Positions 5,231 through 30,766 of a DNA stretch of 64,000 nt are shown here, piece by piece. The DNA comes from Rebecca billardiae RCC1528. Its lineage: Eukaryota; Protista; Haptophyta. The notes under the pieces are model-generated. The model was not told the origin of the DNA. It was given only the letters and a program-made list of their open reading frames with translations, and did not search any database. The translations under genes and the position numbers were made by a program. The stretch lies in NCBI GenBank assembly GCA_965240325.2, contig OZ251226.1, positions 2,604,001 to 2,668,000 of the forward strand, given 5' to 3'. The stretch's first letter is position 1. Each line of letters opens with the position of its first letter.

Positions 5231-8200
5231 ATGCCGCGCACGGACATCATCCCGGGCGTCGAGATCCCAGAGGTGCTCGTCGGCAACCTCTACCCGAAAG
5301 ACGCGCCCGCAGACAAGAAGCTGATGAAGCAGGTGGCGCAGGAGAGCATCGTCTACGTGCTCGAGACGCGCGGCGGCGAGGGCAAGGACGCGTACGGCCA
5401 CGCGGAGGATGCGGTCGCGACTGCGAACAAGATCATTGACGCACAGATCAACTCGGTCCCGATCTTCTACAGCTGGAACAACGACGCCGAGCTCAGGAAG
5501 CTCGTGTTTGCGCCGAATGTGGTGGGTGTGGTCAAGAAGACGGGCGAGCTGCCCGCCTTCTCGCAGACCCAGCTGGACAAGCTGCTCATGGAGCTCGTGA
5601 CCTCGGGCAAGAAGGTCGGCGACGACATCTACAGCGCCGGCGTGCAGAAGCGCTTCAACACGCTGCTGGAGTCGCCGACCACCTCCGAGTACAAGCTCGC
5701 GGTGATCGAGTTCGTCGTGCCCGGCGCGAAGAACGGCGGCTCGGACAAGGGGCCCGACGGCCACCGCGTCGACTCCATCCCGATCGCGAACGGCATCGTC
5801 AAGGCCGGCGCGGCGTGCGAGCTCATCCGCTACGAGTTCGACAAGCACGACGATTTCGTCACCAAGGTCCAGGCGTACGACGCGGTGCTCGTGCGCATCA
5901 ACCCGGGCCAGCTGTCGCAGGGCACGTCCGAGGGCACGCAGGAGCGCTTCGACAAGGCGATGAACGACCTGCTCGCCGCGGGCAAGCTCGTGTGGTCCTC
6001 GCCGGGCGTGCAGACGTGCATGGGCGCCAAGGACGCGCTCGTCAAGATCGCCAACATGTCGTGCGGCCTGGTGGACACGTTCGCGTACTACGAGGCGTCC
6101 GAGCTGGAGGCGGGCTTCAAGAAGACGATGGCGTTCCAGCCGCGCGTGATCAAGCAGAACCGCGGCTCGGCCGGCGAGGGCATCTGGCTGTGCTGGCTCG
6201 AGGGCAAGGACTACTGCAAGAACTTTGGCGACGCGTCGCTGGAGGACGACGACAAGATCAAGCTGATGGAGATGAACGACAACCACGTCGAGCATCACAC
6301 CGTCAAGGAGTTCATCCAGTTCTGCGTTGGCGGTCCGGAGGCGGAGGGCGCCGGTGCGTGCGCGCCAGCGCGTGCCGAGCGTGCACACGCACCGCGCGTG
6401 CGTGCTCTCGCCGCGCTCACCTGGCCCGCCCCCCGCGCGCGCGTGCACGCTCGGCGCAGGCGAGTGGAAGTCGACGTTCCCGGGCAAGTACCTCGAGGGT
6501 GGCAAGGAGGCGGGCGGCCAGCTGGTGGACCAGCGGTTCCTGCCGCGCATCGAGGAGGGCGAGGTGCGCATGCTGATGGTCGGCCCGGTGCTGCAGATGA
6601 TGATCCACAAGAAGCCGGAGGGCGGCGGCCTCTCGGCCGTGGGCGGCAACTCGGCGTACACCTACTACAAGCCGGGCGACCCGCACTACGCCGGCCTGGA
6701 GAAGAAGTTCGTGCAGGAGGACATCCCGCAGCTGATGAAGGCGCTCGAGATCGAGAACGACCCGCTGCCCATCTTGTGGACGGGCGACTTCATCCCGATG
6801 GACGGCGCCGAGCCCGGCACCACCGAGTACGTCGTCGGCGAGTTCAACTGCTCGTGCGTCGGCATCTCCAAGTTCCAGGCGGTGTGCGGCGGCGAGAAGA
6901 CGCTCGCCGACGTGTCGGACGCCGACTACTACGACGCGTCGAAGCTGACCGACCTGATGGGCACGACCGCCATCAAGATGCTCCGCGCGAAGAAGTACCC
7001 GCGCAACAACACGCTGCTGCCGTCGCCGACCGACACCAAGTACAAGCTCGCGGTGATCGAGTTCGTCGTGCCCGGCGCGAAGAACGGCGGCTCGGACAAG
7101 GGGCCCGACGGCCACCGCGTCGACTCCATCCCGATCGCGAACGGCATCATCAAGGCCGGCGCGGCGTGCGAGCTCATCCGCTACGAGCACGACAAGCACG
7201 ACGATTTCGTCACCAAGGTCCAGGCGTACGACGCGGTGCTCGTGCGCATCAACCCGGGCCAGCTGTCGCAGGGCACGTCCGAGGGCACGCAGGAGCGCTT
7301 CGACAAGGCGATGAACGACCTGCTCGCCGCGGGCAAGCTCGTGTGGTCCTCGCCGGGCGTGCAGACGTGCATGGGCGCCAAGGACGCGCTCGTCAAGATC
7401 GCCAACATGTCGTGCGGCCTGGTGGACACGTTCGCGTACTACGAGGCGTCGGAGCTGGAGGCGGGCTTCAAGAAGACGATGGCGTTCCAGCCGCGCGTGA
7501 TCAAGCAGAACCGCGGCTCGGCCGGCGAGGGCATCTGGCTGTGCTGGCTCGAGGGCAAGGACTACTGCAAGAACTTTGGCGACGCGTCGCTGGAGGACGA
7601 CGACAAGATCAAGCTGATGGAGATGAACGACAACCACGTCGAGTACCACACGGTCAAGGAGTTCATCCAGTTCTGCGTTGGCGGTCCGGAGGCGGAGGGC
7701 GCCGGTGCGTGCGCGCCAGCGCGTGCCGAGCGTGCACACGCACCGCGCGTGCGTGCTCTCGCCGCGCTCACCTGGCCCGCCCCCCGCGCGCGCGTGCACG
7801 CTCGGCGCAGGCGAGTGGAAGTCGACGTTCCCGGGCAAGTACCTCGAGGGCGGCAAGGAGGCGGGCGGCCAGCTGGTGGACCAGCGGTTCCTGCCGCGCA
7901 TCGAGGAGGGCGAGGTGCGCATGCTGATGGTCGGCCCGGTGCTGCAGATGATGATCCACAAGAAGCCGGAGGGCGGCGGCCTCTCGGCCGTGGGCGGCAA
8001 CTCGGCGTACACCTACTACAAGCCGGGCGACCCGCACTACGCCAACCTGGAGAAGAAGTTTGTGCAGGAGGACATCCCGCAGCTGATGAAGGCGCTCGAG
8101 ATCGAGAACGACCCGCTGCCCATCTTGTGGACGGGCGACTTCATCCCGATGGACGGCGCCGAGCCCGGCACCACCGAGTACGTCGTCGGCGAGTTCAACT

Positions 8201-8358
8201 GCTCGTGCGTCGGCATCTCCAAGTTCCAGGCGGTGTGCGGCGGCGAGAAGACGCTCGCCGACGTGCCTGACGATGACTACTACGACGCGTCGGAGCTGAC
8301 CGACCTGATGGGCACGACCGCCATCAAGATGCTGGACGAGAAGAAGGCCGCAGCGTAG
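5231..8358 (+). CDS. Cj0069-family (ATP-grasp-like) protein with two near-identical full domains and a degenerate N-terminal partial domain, 3 exons
   Basis: Motifs GGSDKGPDGHR, RINPG, MGAKDALVK, DTFAYY, RVIKQNRGSAGEGIW, VDQRFLPRIEEGEVR, LWTGDF and GEFNCSCVGIS each occur twice. Introns at 6354-6459 and 7705-7810 (106 nt each). Confidence 0.8.
5657..8333 (+). repeat. Intragenic tandem duplication, period 1351 bp, including the intron
   Basis: tacaagctcgcggtg at 5690 and 7041. Introns at 6354 and 7705 appear identical; only scattered exon substitutions. Confidence 0.95.
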
Positions 8359-9489
8359 GCGCTCGCCTCAGCCACCCGTGCACTCACATCCTCCCCATCG
8401 CTGTCCTTTGGTGATCTCACCTGTGTCCTCGTGGATCTCGTGCTGCTGCTCTGCTCCGGAAGCCGGCGGCGCGAGCTGATCTGACTGTATTGCCGGAGCG
8501 CTCAGCACGCGGCGCGGGAGCCTCTCGGGCGTCAAGACGGAGCACGGCCGACCAACGTGATGCTCCCGGTCGAGCGGGCGTATGCGCAGCAGCAGTGCGC
8601 ATTCAACCTCCTGCTGCTGGCTTGTTGCCGGTGCCCTGAGTGTGGAGGGCCTACGACAGCTCGTTCCGCTGTCAGCCTGGCAGCGGCCGGGCAGGAAGCC
8701 ACCGGATGATGCGCCACGCCGCCGCACTTGCGGCGCGGCGGTGTGGCGGTATCGCCGGCGAGGATTTCTGAGCCGGCACCATCACGCTCTTTCAGACGGC
8801 TGAGGCCCACTGGCGCTGTCAATTAAGGGCCGTCTCTCGCCTGTGCTCATGAGACTGCTGATGCACGCTGCGATTAGCCGCCTCGCAGTGCAACTAAAAC
8901 TTCCCGACTACCGTACGAGTTTACACTACGGGCCGAGCTGCGTTTGAGACAGCCCTCGGGCTCGGGCTCGGCCCAAGGGGAGTCGTGCGGCTTCACAGTT
9001 CACGCCCGCAAGCCCGCTGAAGGGGAGCCGCTGAAGCCGGGCTGACGATTTACCGTATGGATGACGCGCCCGCGACTGTACGTGCTGCCCTCCGGCGGCG
9101 CCGTCGCCGACGATGCGGGTCACATGCTCACCAGCCGCCATTTCTACACTGACCCGTTTCCTAAAAATAATGAGGATACCCCCATAGGTCGTTGGAGAAG
9201 TGACGCGAACCAACAACCGGATATCATAAGACGAAAGTCGTCCACCGGCCGCCAGTCTGATCACCCGGCGGCGGAGCCCGTTATAAAGGGGATTTTTATA
9301 CGTTGCGCCCAAAAAGGCAGGCGAGATCAGTACAGTTTACTAATAAGAATAAGAGACGCACACAGCTCAGGCAGGCGAGATAGCTCCTCGAGATGTACAG
9401 CCGCACGGTTGGTGCCCCCTTGGGAGAGGGGCAACTCGCCAGGTGGCGCGAGAGGCGTGCGTCGCTGGCGTGGTGTCCGCCCGCCGCCA

Positions 9490-20807: not shown

Positions 20808-21842
20808 TCAGTGACAGTTGTCGAGCCCATGTCGTGATGGGGCGACCCACGTCGCGCTCATGCCAAGCTCGTTGCCATTGATGATCGAGCCCATGTAGGT
20901 GCGCAGGCCGGTGCGCAGCAGTGGCGGAATAAGGGCGGAGAGCGATTTGCGTGCGGCCGGCTTCGCGTCGACGGGCTCGAGCTCTGCGTCAGCATCGCAA
21001 AGCATCTGTGCAACGCTGTCACCGAGCACCTCCTCACTGAGCATGGCATCGGTGAGGGCGATGTGATGCGCATGGACATCGAGTCGGTTCTTCTCGTCAC
21101 TTTGCTCCACCTCCGAGCGCGACTCGGCAGAGGCATGCGGCATGTTGGCCTGCACCGCCACCGATCGTCGCCGCGGCGTCTGAACCACCTGGTCGAGCGA
21201 CCTGAAGAGGGGCGAGCAGGAGCTTGGCGCTTGAGAAGAAGACGTGGTCGAATCGAGTCGCGTGGAGAAGAGGCTTAGGCTCGAGCCCGATGGCGCGATG
21301 TGCCACGAGCCCTCGTCCTCCTCGTCCTCCTCCTCATCGTCATCCGTGTCATCGTCCGAGGAAGAGTCGTCCGCAGGAGCAGGTGGCTGGTTGAGCGCGG
21401 GCTTCACTTGTCCGAGCCGGTCAGCTGCGAATGGCGTGCACGGTGACGATGCAGGTGTTCCGTCATCGTCCTTGAAGAGCGCGAGCAGAGTGCCCCCAAC
21501 CCCGGCGGCCGCGCCGAAGATCGCTGTGGTCGGTGCCGTGGATGGAGGCGTGGAGTGCTGAACAGAGTGCTTGCGCGATGGCGCGATGTGCCACGAGCCC
21601 TCCTCCTCCTCCTCCTCCTCCTCGTCGTCGTCATCAGTGTCGTCGTCCGAGGACGAATCGTCCGCAGGAGCAGGCGGCTGGATGAGCGCGGGCTTCACTT
21701 GTCCGAGCCGGTCAGCTGCGAATGGCGTGCACGGTGACGATGCAGGTGTTCCGTCATCGTCCTTGAAAAGCGCGAGCAGGTCATCCCCGACCCCCGCGGC
21801 CGCGTCGAAGATCCCCGCGGTCGGTGCAGTGGATGGGGGCAT
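20808..21842 (-). CDS. Hypothetical acidic low-complexity protein with a ~97-aa internal tandem duplication
   Basis: 345-codon ORF with two copies (period ~291 bp) of PPSTAPT..IF.AAAGVG..LLALFKDDDGTP...DDSSSDDD..EEE..GSWHIAPS; indels between copies preserve the frame. Confidence 0.5.
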   Translation of the reverse strand: MPPSTAPTAGIFDAAAGVGDDLLALFKDDDGTPASSPCTPFAADRLGQVKPALIQPPAPADDSSSDDDTDDDDEEEEEEEEGSWHIAPSRKHSVQHSTPPSTAPTTAIFGAAAGVGGTLLALFKDDDGTPASSPCTPFAADRLGQVKPALNQPPAPADDSSSDDDTDDDEEEDEEDEGSWHIAPSGSSLSLFSTRLDSTTSSSQAPSSCSPLFRSLDQVVQTPRRRSVAVQANMPHASAESRSEVEQSDEKNRLDVHAHHIALTDAMLSEEVLGDSVAQMLCDADAELEPVDAKPAARKSLSALIPPLLRTGLRTYMGSIINGNELGMSATWVAPSRHGLDNCH

Positions 21843-22189
21843 GGAGCGTCGAGTCCACAGAGTGGCGGGCGCGAGTGGTTTGTGTGCCCGCGTGTGGGGC
21901 CGGGGTAATAACCCTTGTGCCGATTCGCCCTCCCTAATTGGCTCCCTAATGAGGTGCAGCGGGGGTCCAAGGTTTGTGTGTGTGCACCCCTTGATTCCTT
22001 TGGTGCACCCAAGCACCCATATCAATAATACGCAATCTGAACAAATCATGGAGATATCAGCTCACACAAACAATAAACGCGATTCCTTTCGGTTCAGAAT
22101 CTCGCGTCGAATCTTGGCCTTCCAGTGCGCACCCCAAACCACGGACCTTTCCCCAACTACCGAATGCCAGAAGAGTCACTACAAAAAGT

Positions 22190-23817
22190 CTCCGCCAGCG
22201 GAGCATCCGGGCAAGGGGCCCAGACCCTCCGCCGGCGGAGATTTTTGTGGCCACGAAAAATCCCCGCTGGCGGAGCATGGAATGCTCCGCTGGCGGAGCC
22301 TGGGCTTGCAGGAATGACACAACAAACTAGTTATTATGGTACCAGAAGTCTGTCAACCACCGAACAGCAGTCACCTCCGCTGGCGGAGCTCGCTAATGAG
22401 CCGTGCCTTTTGTAAACTAATACACTCGGCACTTGAACTGAGCTCCGCTGGCGGAGCTTCGGGGGCGCCGAATGCCATTCTTGATGACCCACCTGACTTG
22501 AACTGAGCTCCGCTGGCGGAGCGTCGGTGGTCAGCGCCGTGTGTCATATCGGAGAAATACTGCTAAGCCTTTCAACGCATTCATACTCTGCTGTGCCACA
22601 CATTCAACCTCCGCTGGCGGAGCTCACTGGCCTATTCGACTTGAACTGAGCTCCACTGGTGGAGCCTCGGCTGCGCCGAATGTCCTTAATCGATGACCCA
22701 CTCTCGACTTGAGCTGAGCTCCCCTGGCGGAGCTTTGGTGGCGCCGCATGTCATATTGGAGTAAAGCGGAAGCGTCAACCGTAGTCATATCTATATTGAG
22801 ACTCAACCTCCGCTGGCGGAGCTCGCGGACGACCTACTAGTATTCAACTTTAACTGAGCTCCGCTGGCGGAGCCTCGGGCTGTGTCGAATGTCCTTATCG
22901 ATGGCCGACGTCTTGACTTGAGCTGAGCTCCGCTGGCGGAGCTTTGGTGGCGCCGCATGCCATTTATGGGAATAATGTGAAGCCGTTAACCATAGTCATA
23001 TCCATATTGACACTCAACCTCCGCTGGCCGAGCTCACTGACCTATTCGACTTGAGCTGAGCTCCGCTGGCGGAGCTTTGGTGGCGCCGCATGTCATATTG
23101 GAGTAATGCGAAGCCGTCAACCGTAATCATATCCATATTGATACTCAACCTCCGCTGGCGGAGCTCACTGGCCTATTCGACTTGAACTGAGCTCCGCTGG
23201 CGGAGCCTCGGCTCCGCCGAATGTCCTTATCGATGGCCCACGTGGCACGTCTTGACTTGAGCTGAGCTCCGCTGGCGGAGCTTTGCTGGCGCCGCATGTC
23301 ATATTGGAGTAATGCAAAGCCGTTAACTACCGTAATCATATCCATATTGACACTCAACCTCCGCTGGCGGAGCTCGCGGGCCTATTCAACTTGAACTGAG
23401 CTCCGCTGGCGGAGCCTCGGCTGCGCCGAATGTCCTTATCGATGGCCCACTTGACTTGAGCTGAGCTCCGCTGGCGGAGCTTTGGTGGCGCCGAATGTCA
23501 TATTGGAGTAATGCAACGCCGTTAACTACTACCGTAATCATATCCATATTGACACTCAACCTCCGCTGGCGGAGCTCGCGGGCCTATTCAACTTGAACTG
23601 AGCTCCGCTGGCGGAGCCTCGGCTGCGCCGAATGTCTTTATCGATGGCCCACGACTTGACTTGAGCTGAGCTCCGCTGGCGGAGCTTTGGTGGCGCCGAA
23701 TGTCATATTGGAGTAATGCGAAGTCGTTAACCGTAATACTATATCCATATTGACACTCAACCTCCGCTGGCGGAGCTCACGGACGTATTCAACTTGAACT
23801 GAGCTCCGCTGGCGGAA
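22190..23817 (+). repeat. Left-arm array of ~26 palindromic CTCCGCTGGCGGAG motifs in a ~200-bp trimeric higher-order repeat
   Basis: Motifs counted by eye. Three spacer types recur in fixed order, with unit starts near 22605, 22803, 23013 (partial), 23145, 23353, 23555 and 23757. Confidence 0.95.
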
Positions 23818-24459
23818 GTCTCTGCTTGTGGTTTGCTGCAATTGGGTCTGGGCAGCCTGGGCTCAGCATGGGGCAGCTGTTCACAGCCCAGGCGGGGCGT
23901 CACCGCCTGTGAGCCGTCGGTGGGCAGGGCCGACGGCGTCGCAGAGCTCATGCGTGGGAGCAGCGCGTCGAGGAAGCGATCAAGGTCGAGAAGGAAGGGG
24001 CAAGCAGCAGGGGCTGCCTGTACGTTTGTACATGCCTCCACACCGGTGCACATCACCCTTGCTCACTGCAGTCGTGAACAGTGCTGCCACTCATCTCATC
24101 ATCGCTCACCATGCAGTGACGGCCGAGCTGCGGCGAACTCTCACAGGCACCGAACACGCATCGGCTGTGCCCGCTGGTGCTGGCATGCGCTGTCCTCTAC
24201 TTGCTGTCGGACAGCAAGGAGACGGCACAGCCGCATCTGCGAGCGGGCGAGGTGATGCTGTCCAGTGTCCTCTGCTCAGCGAGGCTGAGAGGCTGAGCAC
24301 GGATCACGGATAGTGAGCCCTGGTATCTCAACGCATCCAGGAGAGCAGTTGGTGCATGCCTGTGCTCAGACGTGCAGGACCAACCATCCGGTGCTGATTC
24401 AAGCACCCGCGCCAACAGCGGCGGCACTCAACTCCACGCTGCTGATGCGGCCGCACAGC

Positions 24460-27400
24460 TGCAGGGATGGTACCACGGCGGGCGACGGCGGGCGCTGCAG
24501 CTGGCAGCTCGGTGGTGCCTGCCCGAGGGGCCTGGGCGCCGGGCGCACCGAGCGCGATGACGCCTCTCGCATCGCCCAGCGCGCTGGAGCCGCTGTCATC
24601 CGACGCTGCTGTGCCCGCGCCCAGCTTGGGCTGCAGCAGCTGCGCTCGACTCCGCGCCGAGTGCGGCGGCAGCAGCGGGGACTTGGTGCCACCGCGGGCT
24701 GCGGCAGGCGCTGCAGCTGGCAGCTCGGTGGTGCGCGCCCGATGGGCCTGGGCGCTGGGCGCAGCGAGCGCGGTGACGCTGCTCGCCTCGCCCAGCGCGC
24801 TGGAGCCGCTGCCATCGCGCGCTGCGCTGCCCGCGCCCAGCTTGGGCTGCCGCAGCTGCACTCAACTCCTCGCCGAGTGCGGCGGCAGCAGCAGGGATGG
24901 TACCACGCGGGCGGCGGCTATCACTTTGGCTGGCAGCTCGGTGGTGCCTGTCCGAGGGGCCTGGGCGGTGGACGCACCGAGCGCGATGACGTTGCTCGCC
25001 TCGCCCAGCGCGCTGGAGCCGCTGCCATCCGGCGCTGCGGTGTCTGCGGCTCCGCGCCCCGCCGGGGCAGCTAGCTGTCACAGCTGGCAGCTGCGCTCGA
25101 CTCCGCGCCAGTGGGAGGGATGATGCCTCGGCGGGTGGTGGCGGTCGATGCAGCTGGCAGCTCGGTGGTGCGCGCCCGAGGGGCGTGACCGGCCTAGGCA
25201 GCAGCAGCTGCGCTCGACTCGCGCCGAGTGTGGCTGCAGCAGCAGGGAAGGCGCCACTGGCGGCGGCGGAGGTGGATGCAGCGATCAGCTCGGTTGTGTG
25301 CGCGCGAGGGGCCTGGGCGGCAGACGCGCCCAATGCGGTGACGCCGATGCACGCGTCCGATATGCTGGCCAGCAGCAGCCGTTGTGACACTTCTTCCGCC
25401 GGCTGACGGCAGCAGGCGGTACCATCGCTCACATTGGTGAATTCGAATCGGGGAGAACCCGGCAGGCCTCAGCCCCGGACACTGCTGCCTGCCAATGACC
25501 TGTGAGGGCCGCAGGCCTTCCGGGGCACGGGAGCCGCTGCGGTCAGCTCTTTGAGCTAGCCCGGCGCCGGGCGCGCGAACAAGTACGGCCCGGCGTCGGT
25601 GAGGCCGAGCAAGGCGCGCCGAAGTGCCGCGGCCCAGATCTCAGCGCACGCATCATCAGTACTACGACATCGCTGCGCCACGGATATGCATCAGATAGCG
25701 ACTGATGATGATGATGCGCCGCGCGCTCCCCGCTGACCGGAGCCCGACTACGAGTAGCAGGCGCGCATGATCTGAGCTGAGTACGTAAGTAGCCCGTGTC
25801 ATCCAGTGGCGGTGTCACACTTATGTGACTCAGGAGTCGGAGGAGTCGTTATCGTCATATCGTCATCATCATGAAGATGCGCAATAAAACGGTCATCAGG
25901 CGGACCTGCGCTACCATACGCCGTCAATGTAATGCTGAGGGCGAGGCCGGCAGCGTAGTCGTAACTTACTACCACTACGTACAGAAAAATGTATAGCGCC
26001 ATCATAATAAGAGTAGCTGCGTGTGACTCGTCACCGCGTTCTCAAAACTCCTGCGCTGCTGATCGGGACTCGGACGTACGCCGTCTTAAGCCTATACCGG
26101 CGTGCGTGCGGTCGCAAGTCATAATTCACGCGGCCCCTGCGACTCAGCGGCTCACTCACCTGGCTCATACGCAGCAACCGAGCAGTCACGGAGATCTGAG
26201 CAGCAGCTGTTAATTACCAGCCTGCTGCTGCTGCTGCCTGCGGCCGCACGCGGCGTGGAGTCGAGCGCTGAGTCCGCAGCTGCCCGAACGGTTCAGCAGC
26301 ATCAAATGGCAGCGGCTCGAGCGTGATAGGGGAAGCGAGGGGCGTCAGCTCGCTCGGCGCGTCCGTCGCCCAGGTCCCTTGGGCAGGCACCGCCGAGCTA
26401 CCAGCTGCAGCGACTGCCGCCGCTCGCCGTGGTACAATCCCTGCTGCTGCCGCCGCACGGGTGCGGAGTCGAGCGCATCTCGTGCTGCTCCGGCTGGGCG
26501 CGGACACCGCAGCGCCGGATGGCAGCGGCTCCAGCGCGCTGGGCGAGGCGAGCAACGTCACCGCGCTCGGTGCGTCCACCACCCAGGCCCCTCGGGCAGG
26601 CACCACCGAGCTGCCAGCCAAAGTGATAGCCGCCGCCCGCCGTGGCAACATCCCTGCTGCTGCCGCCGCACTCGGCGTGAAGTTGATTGAGCGGCCTGCT
26701 GCAGCCCAAGCTGGACGCGGGCGCAGCAGCGCCCGGTGGCAGCGGCTCCAGCGCGCTGGGCGAGGCGAGAGGCGTCACTGTGCTCGGTGCGTCCGTGACC
26801 CAGGCCCCTCGGGCCCGCTGCTGCTGCTGCCTGCGGCCGCACGCGGCGTGGAGTCGAGCGCAGACTGCGCAGAGTCTGCAGCTGCCCGAACGGCGCAGCA
26901 GCATCAAATGGCAGCGGCTCGAGCGTGATAGGGGGAAGCGAGGGGCGTCAGCTCGCTCGACGCGTCCGTCGCCCAGGTCCCTCGGGTAGGCACCGCCGAG
27001 CTACCAGCTGCAGCGACTGCCGCCGCTCGCGCCGTGGTACCACCCCTGCTGCTGCCGCCGCACGGGTGCGGAGTCGAACGCACCTCGTGCTACTCCGGCT
27101 GGGCGCGGACACCGCAGCGCCGGATGGCAGCGGCTCCAGCGCGCTGGGCGAGGCGAGCAACGTCATCGCGCTCGGTGCGTCCACCGCCCAGGCCCCTCGG
27201 GCAGGCACCACCGAGCTGCCAGCCAAAGTGATAGCCGCCGCCCGACGTGGCAACATCCCTGCTGCCACCGCACTCGGCGCGGAGTCGAGCGCAGCTGCGG
27301 CAGCCCACGCTCGACGCGGGCACAGCAGCGCCCGGTGGCAGCGGCTCCAGCGCGCTGGGCGAGGCGAGCAACGTCACCGCGCTCGCTGCGCCCAGCGCCC

Positions 27401-27700
27401 AGGCCCCTCGGGCGCGCACCACCGAGCTGCCAGCTGCAGCGCCTGCCGCAGCCCGCGGTGGCACCATCCCCTCTGCTGCCGCCGCACTCGGCGCGGAGTC
27501 GAGCGCAGCTGCTGCAGCCCAAGCTGGGCGCGGGCACAGCAGCGTCGGATGACAGCGGCTCCAGCGCGCTGGGCGATGCGAGAGGCGTCATCGCGCTCGG
27601 TGCGCCCGGCGCCCAGGCCCCTCGGGCAGGCACCACCGAGCTGCCAGCTGCAGCGCCCGCCGTCGCCCGCCGTGGTACCATCCCTGCAGCTGTGCGGCCG
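24460..27700. repeat. Degenerate ~215-bp GC-rich tandem repeats in the inner arms, in opposite orientations either side of a ~0.8-kb unique core (~25420-26210)
   Basis: cagctcggtggtg at 24505, 24721, 24934 and 25158; reverse copies over 26340-27700. A ~600-bp higher-order duplication starts near 26225 and 26820. Confidence 0.85.
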
Positions 27701-28328
27701 CATCAGCAGCGTGGAGTTGAGTGCCGCCGCTGTTGGCGCGGGTGCTTGAATCAGCACCGGATGGTTGGTCCTGCACGTCTGAGCACAGGCATGCACCAAC
27801 TGCTCTCCTGGATGCGTTGAGATACCAGGGCTCACTATCCGTGATCCGTGCTTAGCCTCTCGGCCTCGCTGAGCAGAGGACACTGGACAGCATCACCTCG
27901 CCCGCTCGCAGATGCGGCTGTGCCGTCTCCTTGCTGTCCGACAGCAAGTAGAGGACAGCGCATGCCAGCACCAGCGGGTACAGCCGATGCGTGTTCGGTG
28001 CCTGTGAGAGTTCGCCGCAGCTCGGCCGTCACTGCATGGTGAGCGATGATGAGATGAGTGGCAGCACTGTTCACGACTGCAGTGAGCAAGGGTGATGTGC
28101 ACCGGTGTGGAGGCATGTACAAACGTACAGGCAGCCCCTGCTGCTTGCCCCTTCCTTCTCGACCTTGATCGCTTCCTCGACGCGCTGCTCCCACGCATGA
28201 GCTCTGCGACGCCGTCGGCCCTGCCCACCGACGGCTCACAGGCGGTGACGCCCCGCCTGGGCTGTGAACAGCTGCCCCATGCTGAGCCCAGGCTGCCCAG
28301 CCCCAATTGCAGCAAACCACAAGCAGAG

Positions 28329-29819
28329 ACTCCGCCAGCGGAGCTCAGTTCAAGTTGAATACGTCCGTGAGCTCCGCCAGCGGAGGTTGAGTGTCAATAT
28401 GGATAGTATTACGGTTAACGACTTCGCATTACTCCAATATGACATTCGGCGCCACCAAAGCTCCGCCAGCGGAGCTCAGCTCAAGTCAAGTCGTGGGCCA
28501 TCGATAAGGACATTCGGCGCAGCCGAGGCTCCGCCAGCGGAGCTCAGTTCAAGTTGAATAGGCCCGCGAGCTCCGCCAGCGGAGGTTGAGTGTCAATATG
28601 GATATGATTACGGTAGTAGTTAACGGCGTTGCATTACTCCAATATGACATGCGGCGCCACCAAAGCTCCGCCAGCGGAGCTCAGCTCAAGTCAAGTGAGC
28701 CATCGATAAGGACATTCGGCGCAGCCGAGGCTCCGCCAGCGGAGCTCAGTTCAAGTCGAATAGGTCAGCAAGCTCCGCCAGCGGAGGTTGAGTGCCAATA
28801 TGGATATGATTGCTGTTGACGATTTCGCATTACTCCAATATGACATGCGGCGCCACCAAAGCTCCGCCAGCGGAGCTCAGCTCAAGTCAAGATGTGGGCC
28901 ATCGATAAGGACATTCGACACAGCCCGAGGCTCCGCCAGCGGAGCTCAGTTCAAGTCGAATAGGTCCGTGAGCTCCGCCAGCGGAGGTTGAGTGTCGATA
29001 TATATGGATATGATTACGGTTAACGACTTCGCATCATTACTCCAATATGACATGCGGCGCCACCAAAGCTCCGCCAGCGGAGCTCAGCTCATCAAGTGAC
29101 AAGTCAAGAAGTGGGCCATCGCGATAAGGACATTCGACACAGCCGAGGCTCCGCCAGCGGAGCTCAGTTAAAGTTGAATACTAGTAGGTACGCGAGCTCC
29201 GCCAGCGGAGGTTGAGTATCAATATAGATATGACTACGGTTGACGCTTCCGCGTTACTCCAATATGACATGCGGCGCCACCAAAGCTCCGCCAGGGGAGC
29301 TCAGCTCAAGTCGAGAGTGGGTCATCGATGAAGGACATTCGGCGCAGCCGAGGCTCCACCAGTGGAGCTCAGTTCAAGTCGAATAGGCCAGTGAGCTCCG
29401 CCAGCGGAGGTTGAATGTGTGGCACAGCAGAGTATGAATGCGTTGAAAGGCTTAGCATTATTTCTCCAATATGACACACGGCGCTGACCACCGACGCTCC
29501 GCCAGCGGAGCTCAGTTCAAGTCAGGTGGGTCATCAAGAATGGCATTCGGCGCCCCCGAAGCTCCGCCAGCGGAGCTCAGTTCAAGTCGGCCAAGTGTAT
29601 TAGTTTACAAAAGGCACGGCTCATTAGCGAGCTCCGCCAGCGGAGGTGACTGCTGTTCGGTGGTTGTCAGACTTCTGGTAACTAGTTTGTTGTGTCAATC
29701 CTGCAAGCCCAGGCTCCGCCAGCGGAGCATTCCATGCTCCGCCAGCGGGGATTTTTCGTGGCCACAAAAATCTCCGCCGGCGGAGGGTCTGGGTCTTGCC
29801 CGATGCTCCGCTGGCGGGG
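28329..29819 (-). repeat. Right-arm array of ~24 CTCCGCCAGCGGAG motifs, mirror of the left array
   Basis: Seen directly; the same variant motifs occur at mirrored positions. Confidence 0.95.
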
Positions 29820-30766
29820 ATTTTTTGTAGTGACTGCCCTGCGAATGCCTAGATTTCAGCAGCTGAGATTCAGCGCAGATCTGTCGTCCTACAGTTTACT
29901 AAGAATAAGAGACGCACACAGCTCAGGCAGGCGAGATTGTCGCCCGCCAATAGATTCAGCAGCCCTGTGTGCGGGCGGTCATCCCCGAGCCCGAGGCCCG
30001 TCGCCGATACAACCCACTAGAGACTACCTAGAGACTCCTACGGCCGCCTAGCTTACTTAAGCTTACAGACCAGTTCCAACGAGCGCTCCATATATATATA
30101 TATTCTTCATTCTTCATCTTCCAGTTCTTCCCTTCGGCTGGGGCTTAGGGCTACAGTAGATCAGTCGACGCGGCGTCGCTCACAGCGCAGGCAGGTGTTT
30201 GGCGCGGCTGCACTCTCGAGGTGGCTGGGATACAACATCCAGGTGCAGCACCCTCCCTGTGTGGTGTCAGAGCGCGCTCTCCGGAGCGCGTGCCTCCGAG
30301 CGCGGGGCGGCCGCTTGCTGCAATGGCCGCCTCGATGAGGTGCGGCAACGCGCCCCTCACCTGCCTGGCGCCGGTCTGTTTTGTGGCGGTGTCTTTTTGC
30401 AGCAGTGTTTTGGGATGGCGCCGTCAATCGCGCCGCCTTAACCAAAAGTGCACGTTAAAACATATATATAGTAAACTGTAGTAGCGTCTAACACAGGTCG
30501 ACGAGGGCGGAATGAGACAAAATCCAGGATCGTGTTTTGCGCTCGACTCCACGACTCTGGCGCTCACCGGCCCATCGGGCATCGGCGGCATCGCGCACGT
30601 CGTTGTGCCCTTGACTCATGCAAGGGTGAGCGAGGACGTGACGTCGTCTCGCCTCGCGCAGATCCTGAGATGATCCACCACACACTTACCACAGCAACCA
30701 TACTTTACTTTATTGAAGGGCTCACTCAGTGTAGTTCTACTTCTCTAGTGCCTGAATAAGTAGTCA

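What the first reader, a model, noticed from the sequence alone, without database searches (positions are those of the whole stretch)
22168..29841. 7.7-kb foldback element with mirrored arrays of ~50 palindromic 14-mers and a 7-bp TSD
Seen: ~2.8-kb inverted arms, each with a terminal CAG...AGTCACTACAAAAA, then ~1.6 kb of (gag)CTCCGC-TG-GCGGAG(ctc) palindromes in a 3-spacer ~200-bp higher-order unit, ~640 bp of near-identical unique DNA, and ~215-bp repeats around a non-coding core. The flanks carry cgaatgc (8 bp cgaatgcc if one C is shared). Known: long internally repetitive TIRs with 7-bp TSD and CA..TG ends characterise Galileo/P-superfamily foldback elements, while 8-bp TSDs with subterminal repeats characterise hAT. 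Inference: a possibly undescribed algal foldback family whose palindromes are multimerised transposase-binding sites and a potential hairpin-RNA/siRNA source. It mimics a CRISPR array superficially.
Basis: partly seen in the sequence, partly recalled or inferred. Interest (0 to 1): 0.8.

Follow-up and report, generated by a model that had tools for sequence, protein, structure and literature searches.

The report
Foldback transposon with palindrome-array arms
This is a real, very recently active, protein-less hairpin-shaped jumping gene (16 full copies in a 72-Mb GC-rich alga) whose arms are arrays of one private 14-base palindrome; it is a new family of a known kind, probably moved by a Shanks/hATv-type enzyme.

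Summary
Window 22168-29841 is a 7,674-bp foldback element with CAG...CTG ends and an exact 7-bp duplication (cgaatgc). It carries 48 copies of CTCCGC-YR-GCGGAG, against 0.3 expected.

It is a mobile family. The genome has 16 full copies (7.0-9.4 kb) and 2 truncated ones. Seven of 15 assessable copies have exact 7-bp duplications. Six 6,987-bp copies differ by only 2-9 bases. No copy encodes a protein.

The palindrome is private to the family: 401 of 410 genomic 18-mers lie in it. Between subfamilies it is 96-97% conserved, against 83-84% for the spacers.

The inner body (640-bp segment, 214-bp satellite, core) is shared with a sibling family that has different tips but also CA...TG ends and 7-bp duplications.

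The enzyme is not shown. I favour the haptophyte hATv group ("Shanks" of Tisochrysis lutea). It has 7-bp duplications and unequal 26-bp ends, and its end matches 9 of this family's first 11 bases. The main rival is a P-type transposase: I found one intact gene of that type, in a single copy, on another contig.

The scan has already described related 7-bp foldback families on other DNA of this genome. Interest is moderate.

The parts
22161..22167 (.). left copy of the 7-bp target-site duplication (cgaatgc)
   Evidence: Read directly. Seven other-locus comparisons show that exact 7-bp duplications are the rule for this family.
22168..22189 (+). left ('A') terminus, CAGAAGAGTCACTACAAAAAGT
   Evidence: Every copy in the genome carries one A-type end.
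22190..22298 (+). left tip: four palindromic sites that form a nested local hairpin
   Evidence: One search gives the sites. The DNA fold gives -46.9 kcal/mol, z = -6.7.
22168..23817 (+). left arm array: 25 CTCCGC-TG-GCGGAG sites in units of about 200 bp with three sites each
23817..24456 (+). left copy of the ~640-bp unique body segment
   Evidence: It is 99% complementary to the right copy and is shared with the sibling family in L048.
24416..25039 (+). left block of the 216-bp satellite (2.9 copies)
   Evidence: The same satellite forms arrays at many other loci in the genome.
25040..26305 (.). unique non-coding core
   Evidence: No long ORF and no Rfam family. It is present in all 16 copies at 89-100% identity.
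26306..27684 (-). right blocks of the 213-214-bp satellite (2.4 + 3.6 copies)
27692..28331 (-). right copy of the ~640-bp unique body segment
   Evidence: pair I1
28322..29841 (-). right arm array: 23 palindromic sites (centre read as CA on the + strand)
29820..29841 (-). right ('B') terminus, CAGGGCAGTCACTACAAAAAAT on the - strand
   Evidence: It shares 9 of its first 11 bases with the Shanks TIR.
29842..29848 (.). right copy of the 7-bp target-site duplication (cgaatgc)

Best explanation
What it is. The element is one copy of a non-autonomous, foldback-type cut-and-paste DNA transposon family. It has two slightly different ends (CAGAAGAGTCAC... and CAGGGCAGTCAC...). Each end is followed by a small nested hairpin of four palindromic sites. 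Then comes 1.5-1.7 kb of the same 14-bp palindrome in a three-site unit of about 200 bp. Inside that lies an older body (640-bp segment, 214-bp satellite, non-coding core) that it shares with sibling families.

Shown:
- The family is mobile and makes 7-bp duplications.
- It was active very recently.
- It encodes nothing.
- Its arms change length by whole repeat units.
- One lineage has flipped its core.

Inferred:
- It is moved in trans by a transposase encoded elsewhere, most likely of the haptophyte hATv (Shanks-type) group.
- The palindromes are multiplied docking sites for a dimeric DNA-binding part of that enzyme. This would give a protein-less element high avidity for it, as proposed for the tandem repeats in Galileo's long ends.

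My odds: mobile non-autonomous foldback family 0.97. Enzyme: hATv-type about 0.55, P-type about 0.2. Palindromes are binding sites about 0.55.
For: Family and mobility:
- The 14-mer end has 34 genomic hits, which make 16 paired copies plus 2 solo ends; the reversed control gives 0.
- Every copy has one A end and one B end.
- Exact 7-bp duplications occur in 7 of 15 assessable copies, and a 6-of-7 match in one more. Chance is about 6e-5 per copy.
- Six 6,987-bp copies differ by 2-9 bases.
- All copies consist of the same modules and contain no transposase.

Palindromes:
- 401 of 410 genomic 18-mers lie in this family, and none lies in the sibling families.
- Between subfamilies they are 96.3-97.5% identical, against 83.4-84.5% outside them.
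- The first site sits 22 bp from each end in all copies.

Sibling family: same body, different tips, CA...TG ends, exact 7-bp duplication in 2 of 2 copies.

Link to hATv:
- Shanks of T. lutea has 7-bp duplications and non-identical 26-bp TIRs beginning TAGGGCGGTCAAAC (PMC10138859).
- The B end here is CAGGGCAGTCAC, identical at 9 of the first 11 bases.
- Shanks, this family and the sibling family all fit the terminal pattern YA-N4-RGTY.
- Earlier scan notes report Shanks-type copies and a 6.76-kb hAT-like autonomous element with 7-bp duplications in this same genome. I did not check these notes.

Analogy: Galileo's THAP domain binds repeated sites inside its long ends (PMC3688188).
Against: - No transposase was tied to the family by sequence. 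The end comparison therefore rests on a published T. lutea sequence, and I did not verify that this genome is T. lutea or a close relative.
- The first base is C here and T in Shanks. The A end (CAGAAG) matches Shanks less well than the B end does.
- Eleven bases is a short stretch to argue from.
- Eight of 15 copies lack an exact duplication: one is a 6-of-7 match, five have shorter in-register matches of 3-6 bp, and two have none.
- The higher conservation of the palindromes could come partly from alignment anchoring on the repeated sites, or from gene conversion between self-complementary sites, rather than from selection for binding.
- A P-type transposase gene with an intact catalytic triad exists in the genome. 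P/Galileo elements also make 7-bp duplications and start with CA.
Confidence: 0.55

Rival explanations
1. It is a Galileo-like member of the P superfamily. The single-copy P-type transposase gene on contig 21 moves this family, and perhaps the other CA...TG foldback families with 7-bp duplications.
For: - PF21787 hits C21:1533970-1534365 (-) inside a 1,322-codon open frame without stops.
- It is the only copy in the genome.
- The protein has 578 relatives, and the best of them carry PF21787 + PF21788.
- Columns matching the catalytic triad (FDE, DGA..N, D.LEH.FG) are invariant.
- A profile of the family hits the Drosophila P transposase 6p5a at E = 6.5e-43.
- Galileo makes 7-bp duplications and has long, internally repetitive ends holding multiple THAP sites.
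Against: - tblastn of the P-like ORF against all foldback copies finds nothing.
- No palindrome lies in the 3.4 kb held around the gene.
- No end-like sequence appears in the 370 bp downstream of its stop.
- No THAP or P HTH domain was detected, although those searches were silent in the controls too.
- A single-copy gene may be domesticated.
- The end sequence resembles Shanks, not P or Galileo.
Confidence: 0.2
2. The family is moved by some other or unknown transposase, for example a Mutator-like one (these are abundant here) or a superfamily not yet described.
For: - No enzyme is linked by sequence.
- Earlier scan notes report giant Mutator elements in this genome.
- Several foldback families of this genome have unexplained duplication lengths.
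Against: - As I recall, Mutator-type elements usually make 8-10-bp duplications.
- The CA...TG ends and the YA-N4-RGTY pattern shared with Shanks point elsewhere.
Confidence: 0.12
3. The palindrome arrays are not functional sites. They would be a private satellite that grew by unequal exchange inside the arms and is kept uniform by conversion between arms.
For: - Copy number varies by whole units between arms and between copies: 37-53 exact sites per copy.
- Whole higher-order units, spacers included, are 90% or more uniform within a subfamily.
- The inner 214-bp satellite behaves the same way and is plainly not family-specific.
Against: - Between subfamilies the sites are far better kept than the spacers.
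- The site forms part of the terminal 36 bp at both ends in every copy and recurs three more times in the tip.
Confidence: 0.35
4. It is an assembly artefact or a non-mobile inverted duplication.
For: None, apart from the general risk of chimeric reads at long palindromes.
Against: There are 16 copies at different loci with their own 7-bp duplications. The arms differ by indels of whole units, and six near-identical copies exist.
Confidence: 0.01

Closest known systems
Shanks / Repbase hATv elements of haptophytes (Tisochrysis lutea; PMC10138859)
   Same: Both make 7-bp target duplications and have non-identical terminal repeats of about 26 bp. The ends are similar: TAGGGCGGTCA in Shanks and CAGGGCAGTCA here. 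Both have many non-autonomous derivatives and recent activity. By earlier scan notes, Shanks-type elements occur in the same genome.
   Different: Shanks is 6.77 kb with two ORFs and short ends, and its known non-autonomous copies are 0.5-3 kb. This family is 7-9.4 kb, protein-less and foldback-shaped, with 2.8-kb arms of palindrome arrays and satellites. Its first base is C, not T. No internal similarity was tested.
Galileo (P superfamily, Drosophila)
   Same: Both have foldback-like long ends with internal tandem repeats, 7-bp duplications and CA-type ends. Galileo has repeated transposase (THAP) sites inside its ends, and its ends vary in length between copies (PMC3688188, PMC4168063).
   Different: Galileo has autonomous copies encoding a P transposase, and its duplication has a palindromic GTANTAC consensus. 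Here no copy is coding and no target consensus is visible in 9 sites. The end sequence looks hATv-like, and the repeated motif is itself a palindrome.
Drosophila Foldback (FB) and Tetris elements
   Same: All are non-coding hairpin-shaped elements whose arms are tandem repeats, and arm repeats can also occur as satellite DNA elsewhere (Tetris, PMC4079207). Here the 214-bp satellite is likewise found in arrays outside the family.
   Different: As I recall, FB makes 9-bp duplications and is linked to Mutator-type enzymes. The tips and the repeat motif here are unrelated.
Subterminal transposase-binding repeats of classical hAT elements (Ac, Hermes)
   Same: Short motifs are repeated many times near both ends, and the two ends are not equivalent. 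This comparison is from my own knowledge.
   Different: Those motifs number about 10-25 over about 250 bp and are not palindromes, and the duplication is 8 bp. Here there are about 20-27 palindromic sites per arm over 1.6 kb.

Membership tests
Foldback-type non-autonomous class II transposon (descriptive class) | Long inverted arms that make up most of the element, internally repetitive, with no coding capacity | tested here: met
   The arms are about 2.8 kb of 7.67 kb. There are arrays of 14-mers and of 214-bp units, and no transposase in any of the 16 copies.
Foldback-type non-autonomous class II transposon (descriptive class) | Mobility: several copies with the same ends and target-site duplications | tested here: met
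   There are 16 full copies. Seven have exact 7-bp duplications, and six copies are over 99.8% identical.
hATv / Shanks group | 7-bp target-site duplication | tested here: met
   The Shanks reference has the 7-bp duplication GCGGCTG.
hATv / Shanks group | Terminal repeats similar to TAGGGCGGTCAAACAG..., non-identical between the two ends | tested here: inconclusive
   The B end matches at 9 of the first 11 bases and the A end at fewer. The two ends are non-identical, as in Shanks. The stretch is short and no statistics are available beyond a rough chance estimate.
hATv / Shanks group | Mobilised by, or derived from, an element encoding the Shanks ORF1/ORF2 proteins | not tested
Classical hAT superfamily | 8-bp target-site duplication | tested here: not met
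   The duplication is 7 bp. An eighth matching base appears in only 3 of 7 copies.
P superfamily (P, 1360, Galileo) | 7-8-bp target-site duplication and CA...TG ends | tested here: met
P superfamily (P, 1360, Galileo) | A P-type (THAP9-like) transposase that shares ends with the family | tested here: inconclusive
   One intact P-type gene exists. It shows no shared sequence with the family, and its flanks could not be fetched.

The most novel reading that the evidence does not exclude
The arrays of about 40-50 palindromic sites are a 'transposase sponge'. A protein-less element would have multiplied the dimer-binding site of its helper enzyme along both arms and so out-competes the autonomous element. 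This would explain a burst of six near-identical 7-kb copies. The same body has swapped tips between families, so body and tip evolve as separate modules. A bolder variant is that the single-copy P-type gene, rather than Shanks, is the shared helper of all the CA...TG foldback families of this genome with 7-bp duplications.
Probability: 0.2. Interest if true: 0.6.

Novelty: new member of a known kind. Interest (0 to 1): 0.4.

Why it matters
- It gives a clean, young and countable family (16 copies, two subfamilies, one core inversion) for asking how foldback elements recruit a transposase they do not encode.
- The repeated site is unusually well defined: a 14-bp palindrome private to the family. 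Binding is therefore directly testable.
- It suggests one explanation for the many unassigned CA...TG foldback families of this genome with 7-bp duplications. They may share the terminal pattern YA-N4-RGTY with the catalogued Shanks/hATv elements.
- It puts on record a rival helper that no scan note retrieved here mentions: an intact P-type transposase gene present in a single copy.
- Long near-perfect hairpins next to genes may also matter for genome stability and silencing. That remains untested.

Tried and rejected
- Transposase inside the family. ORF lists of the longest copies, a module map and tblastn with the P-like protein found nothing. The extra length of longer copies is repeat units, except for a foreign 2.4-kb insert in L045.
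- Autonomous partner through the ends. The end pattern with up to 3 mismatches gives only this family plus noise no higher than the reversed control.
- P HTH domain (PF12017) and THAP (PF05485) in the genome. No match, but the control genomes were silent too, so this says nothing.
- Word-based protein search with the P-like ORF. Blank. The full HMMER search then found 578 relatives.
- The 55-nt similarity between the window's right flank and the 3' side of the P-like gene. It is an unrelated small repeat with about 1,017 genomic copies.
- Ectopic-recombination explanation for the copies without duplications. Flank 7-mers of copies on the same contig do not pair up (read by eye).
- Rfam on the element. 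Nothing.
- JGI metagenome scans with the end and with the palindrome. Nothing, apart from one chance single site.
- Organism identity. The protein atlas was uninformative, and T. lutea motifs were not found in the window or loci, where few were expected. I did not establish the species.
- Fetching the flanks of the P-like gene and any Shanks-type copy. Three protein searches failed on the server and still counted against the cap.
Full report
**1.

Window 22168-29841 is a 7,674-bp element. Its outer 2.7-2.9 kb on each side are inverted copies of one another.
- The outer 900 bp are 93.5% identical and the next 2 kb 96.5%. One 865-nt stretch is 99% complementary.
- The 14-mer AGTCACTACAAAAA occurs only at the two ends, in opposite orientation.
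- The palindrome CTCCGC-YR-GCGGAG, allowing one mismatch, occurs 48 times: 25 in the left arm and 23 in the right. It occurs nowhere else in the 64-kb window, against 0.31 expected.
- The sites sit in a unit of 199-207 bp with three sites each, about 42, 65-75 and 89-95 bp apart.
- Further in lie a 640-bp unique segment, blocks of a 213-216-bp tandem repeat, and a 1.27-kb centre with no long ORF and no Rfam match.
- The flanks carry cgaatgc on both sides, at 22161-22167 and 29842-29848.

**2. It is a mobile family, and a young one**

The window lies at C8:2,604,001-2,668,000 of a 72-Mb, 41-contig genome.
- The terminal 14-mer has 34 hits there. They form 16 pairs 7.0-9.4 kb apart plus two solo ends. 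The reversed control gives none.
- Every pair has one end beginning CAGAAG and one beginning CAGGGC, so the two ends are distinct and both are conserved.

Target duplications in the 15 copies whose flanks can be read:
- Seven have an exact 7-bp duplication: cgaatgc, gcgcgcg, agccacc, gtcggaa, tgatgta, ccctcgc, gttcagc.
- One matches at 6 of 7 positions.
- Five have shorter in-register matches of 6, 5, 4, 3 and 3 bp. These would fit small deletions at the junction. In L044 a full ctgaaga can be read if four bases of the element end were lost.
- Two have none, and both of these also have a mutated terminal triplet.
- An eighth matching base appears in only 3 of the 7 exact cases, so the duplication is 7 bp, not 8.

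Six copies are exactly 6,987 bp long and differ pairwise by 2-9 bases. That marks a very recent burst.

**3. Anatomy across copies**

- All copies are built from the same modules. Length differences are whole repeat units.
- The exception is one copy (L045), which has taken up a foreign 2.4-kb element.
- No copy contains anything like a transposase.
- There are two subfamilies, about 85-90% alike.
- The core is oriented the same way relative to the A and B ends in 14 copies. It is flipped in the near-identical pair L035/L037. This is what one recombination between the inverted arms would produce.
- Each tip consists of 22 unique bases followed by four palindromic sites that pair with one another into a nested hairpin. 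The DNA folds give z = -6.7 and -6.2.

**4. The palindrome**

- The 18-mer GAGCTCCGCTGGCGGAGC has 410 hits in the genome. Of these, 401 lie in the 16 copies and two fragments. None lies in the sibling families or near the P-like gene.
- Between subfamilies, bases inside the sites are 96.3-97.5% identical, against 83.4-84.5% outside them.
- Caveats apply. The repeated sites anchor the alignments. Self-complementary sites can also be homogenised by conversion. Within a subfamily whole units are uniform, spacers included.
- The first site lies 22 bp from each end in every copy.

I therefore regard "multiplied docking sites for a dimeric DNA-binding domain" as the best reading, at about 0.55. The neutral private-satellite reading is a serious alternative. 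[quoted passage not shown]

**5. Shared body, different tips**

- The 214-bp repeat and parts of the core occur at hundreds of other places (551 matches).
- Two such loci (L048, L049) are foldback elements with the same 640-bp segment, satellite and core. Their 227-bp tips are quite different: hairpin-rich and without the palindrome.
- Their ends are CAATAAGGTCTGGCGC and CAGCCAGGTTTGGCGC. Both copies have exact 7-bp duplications, cgtcaaa and gcacatc.
- The family under study is therefore this body with another tip, and that tip has been expanded by the palindrome array.
- Earlier scan notes on other DNA of this genome describe the same theme: one body with different ends, and CA...TG foldbacks with 7-bp duplications and no known enzyme.

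**6. Which enzyme?**

Two candidates emerged.

(a) *A P-type transposase.*
- PF21787 hits one place, C21:1533970-1534365 (-), inside a 1,322-codon open frame without stops. It is the only copy in the genome.
- It has 578 relatives in the 1.84-billion-protein library, the best at 44% identity. The top hits carry PF21787 and PF21788.
- An alignment keeps the FDE, DGA..N and D.LEH.FG columns invariant. Its profile hits the Drosophila P transposase structure 6p5a at E = 6.5e-43.
- Nothing ties it to the family. It shares no sequence with the copies, no palindromes lie in the 3.4 kb I hold, and no end-like sequence lies downstream. I could not fetch its flanks.

(b) *hATv / Shanks.*
- A paper on Tisochrysis lutea describes Shanks: 6,770 bp, two ORFs without recognisable domains, 7-bp duplications, and non-identical 26-bp ends beginning TAGGGCGGTCAAACAG. 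Repbase files it in a small haptophyte-only group, hATv (PMC10138859).
- The B end here, CAGGGCAGTCAC, agrees at 9 of the first 11 bases.
- Shanks, this family and the sibling family all fit YA-N4-RGTY.
- Scan notes report Shanks-type copies, and a 6.76-kb hAT-like autonomous element with 7-bp duplications, in this very genome. I did not verify them.
- A Shanks subterminal motif (CTACGAAAATCTTCGCCA, present in 40 of the listed sequences) resembles the terminal CTACAAAAAGTCTCCGCCA here. I treat this only as a lead.

On balance I favour hATv (about 0.55) over P (about 0.2) and over other enzymes (about 0.12). The remainder is unassigned.

**7. Verdict**

The family is mobile and young, and I found no paper in the held library that describes it.
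- Its kind is known: a non-autonomous foldback DNA transposon with internally repetitive ends, as in Galileo, FB and Tetris.
- Sibling families in the same genome have already been noted by this scan.
- Three things are distinctive: the clean private palindrome array, the tip-on-shared-body build, and the probable tie to the little-known hATv group.
- I did not establish the species. I found no relatives in JGI metagenome contigs.
- The hairpin-RNA/siRNA idea and the chromatin effects could not be tested.

Noticed in passing
G000:C21:1532845-~1536810 (-); L053 holds 1532470-1535865: A single-copy, intact P-superfamily (THAP9-like) transposase gene. It has a 1,322-codon open frame and an invariant DDE-type triad, and a family profile hits Drosophila P transposase 6p5a at E = 6.5e-43. 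No retrieved scan note mentions it. Its flanks and N-terminus were not seen.
   Followed up: partly
window 29890-29948; L053 129-187; window ~9331-9381: A small repeat containing TACTAAGAATAAGAGACGCACACAGCTCAGGC has about 1,017 copies genome-wide. One copy lies 50 bp from the right end of the foldback element and another just 3' of the P-like gene. It is probably a MITE or a common 3' module.
   Followed up: partly
L045 (G000:C27:645337-655132), element coordinates 6275-8680: A nested 2.41-kb insertion sits inside one foldback copy. It has perfect 38-bp inverted ends (AGACCCCTTCAGGGACGG...), and only AT is duplicated at the site. This is a different, unidentified transposon family.
   Followed up: partly
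L048 (C19:189500-199400), L049 (C36:61000-70990), L051 (C32): A sibling foldback family has the same 640-bp segment, 214-bp satellite and core but 227-bp hairpin-rich tips. Its ends are CAATAAGGTCTGGCGC and CAGCCAGGTTTGGCGC, and 2 of 2 copies have exact 7-bp duplications.
   Followed up: partly
L035 (C5:1580509-1589894) and L037 (C6:771-10159): In these two near-identical copies the core is inverted relative to the asymmetric ends, compared with the other 14 copies. This is evidence of a flip by recombination between the arms.
   Followed up: partly
window 20808-22049 (-): A 413-codon ATG-started ORF without a Pfam match begins 119 bp from the left end of the element. The copy may therefore sit just upstream of a gene, as earlier notes report for related families.
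   Followed up: no
G000:C10:1717625 and G000:C12:593396 (L046, L047): There are two truncated copies of different subfamilies. One has the A end plus 1.65 kb of arm only. The other has the B end, the right arm and the core, but no left arm.
   Followed up: partly
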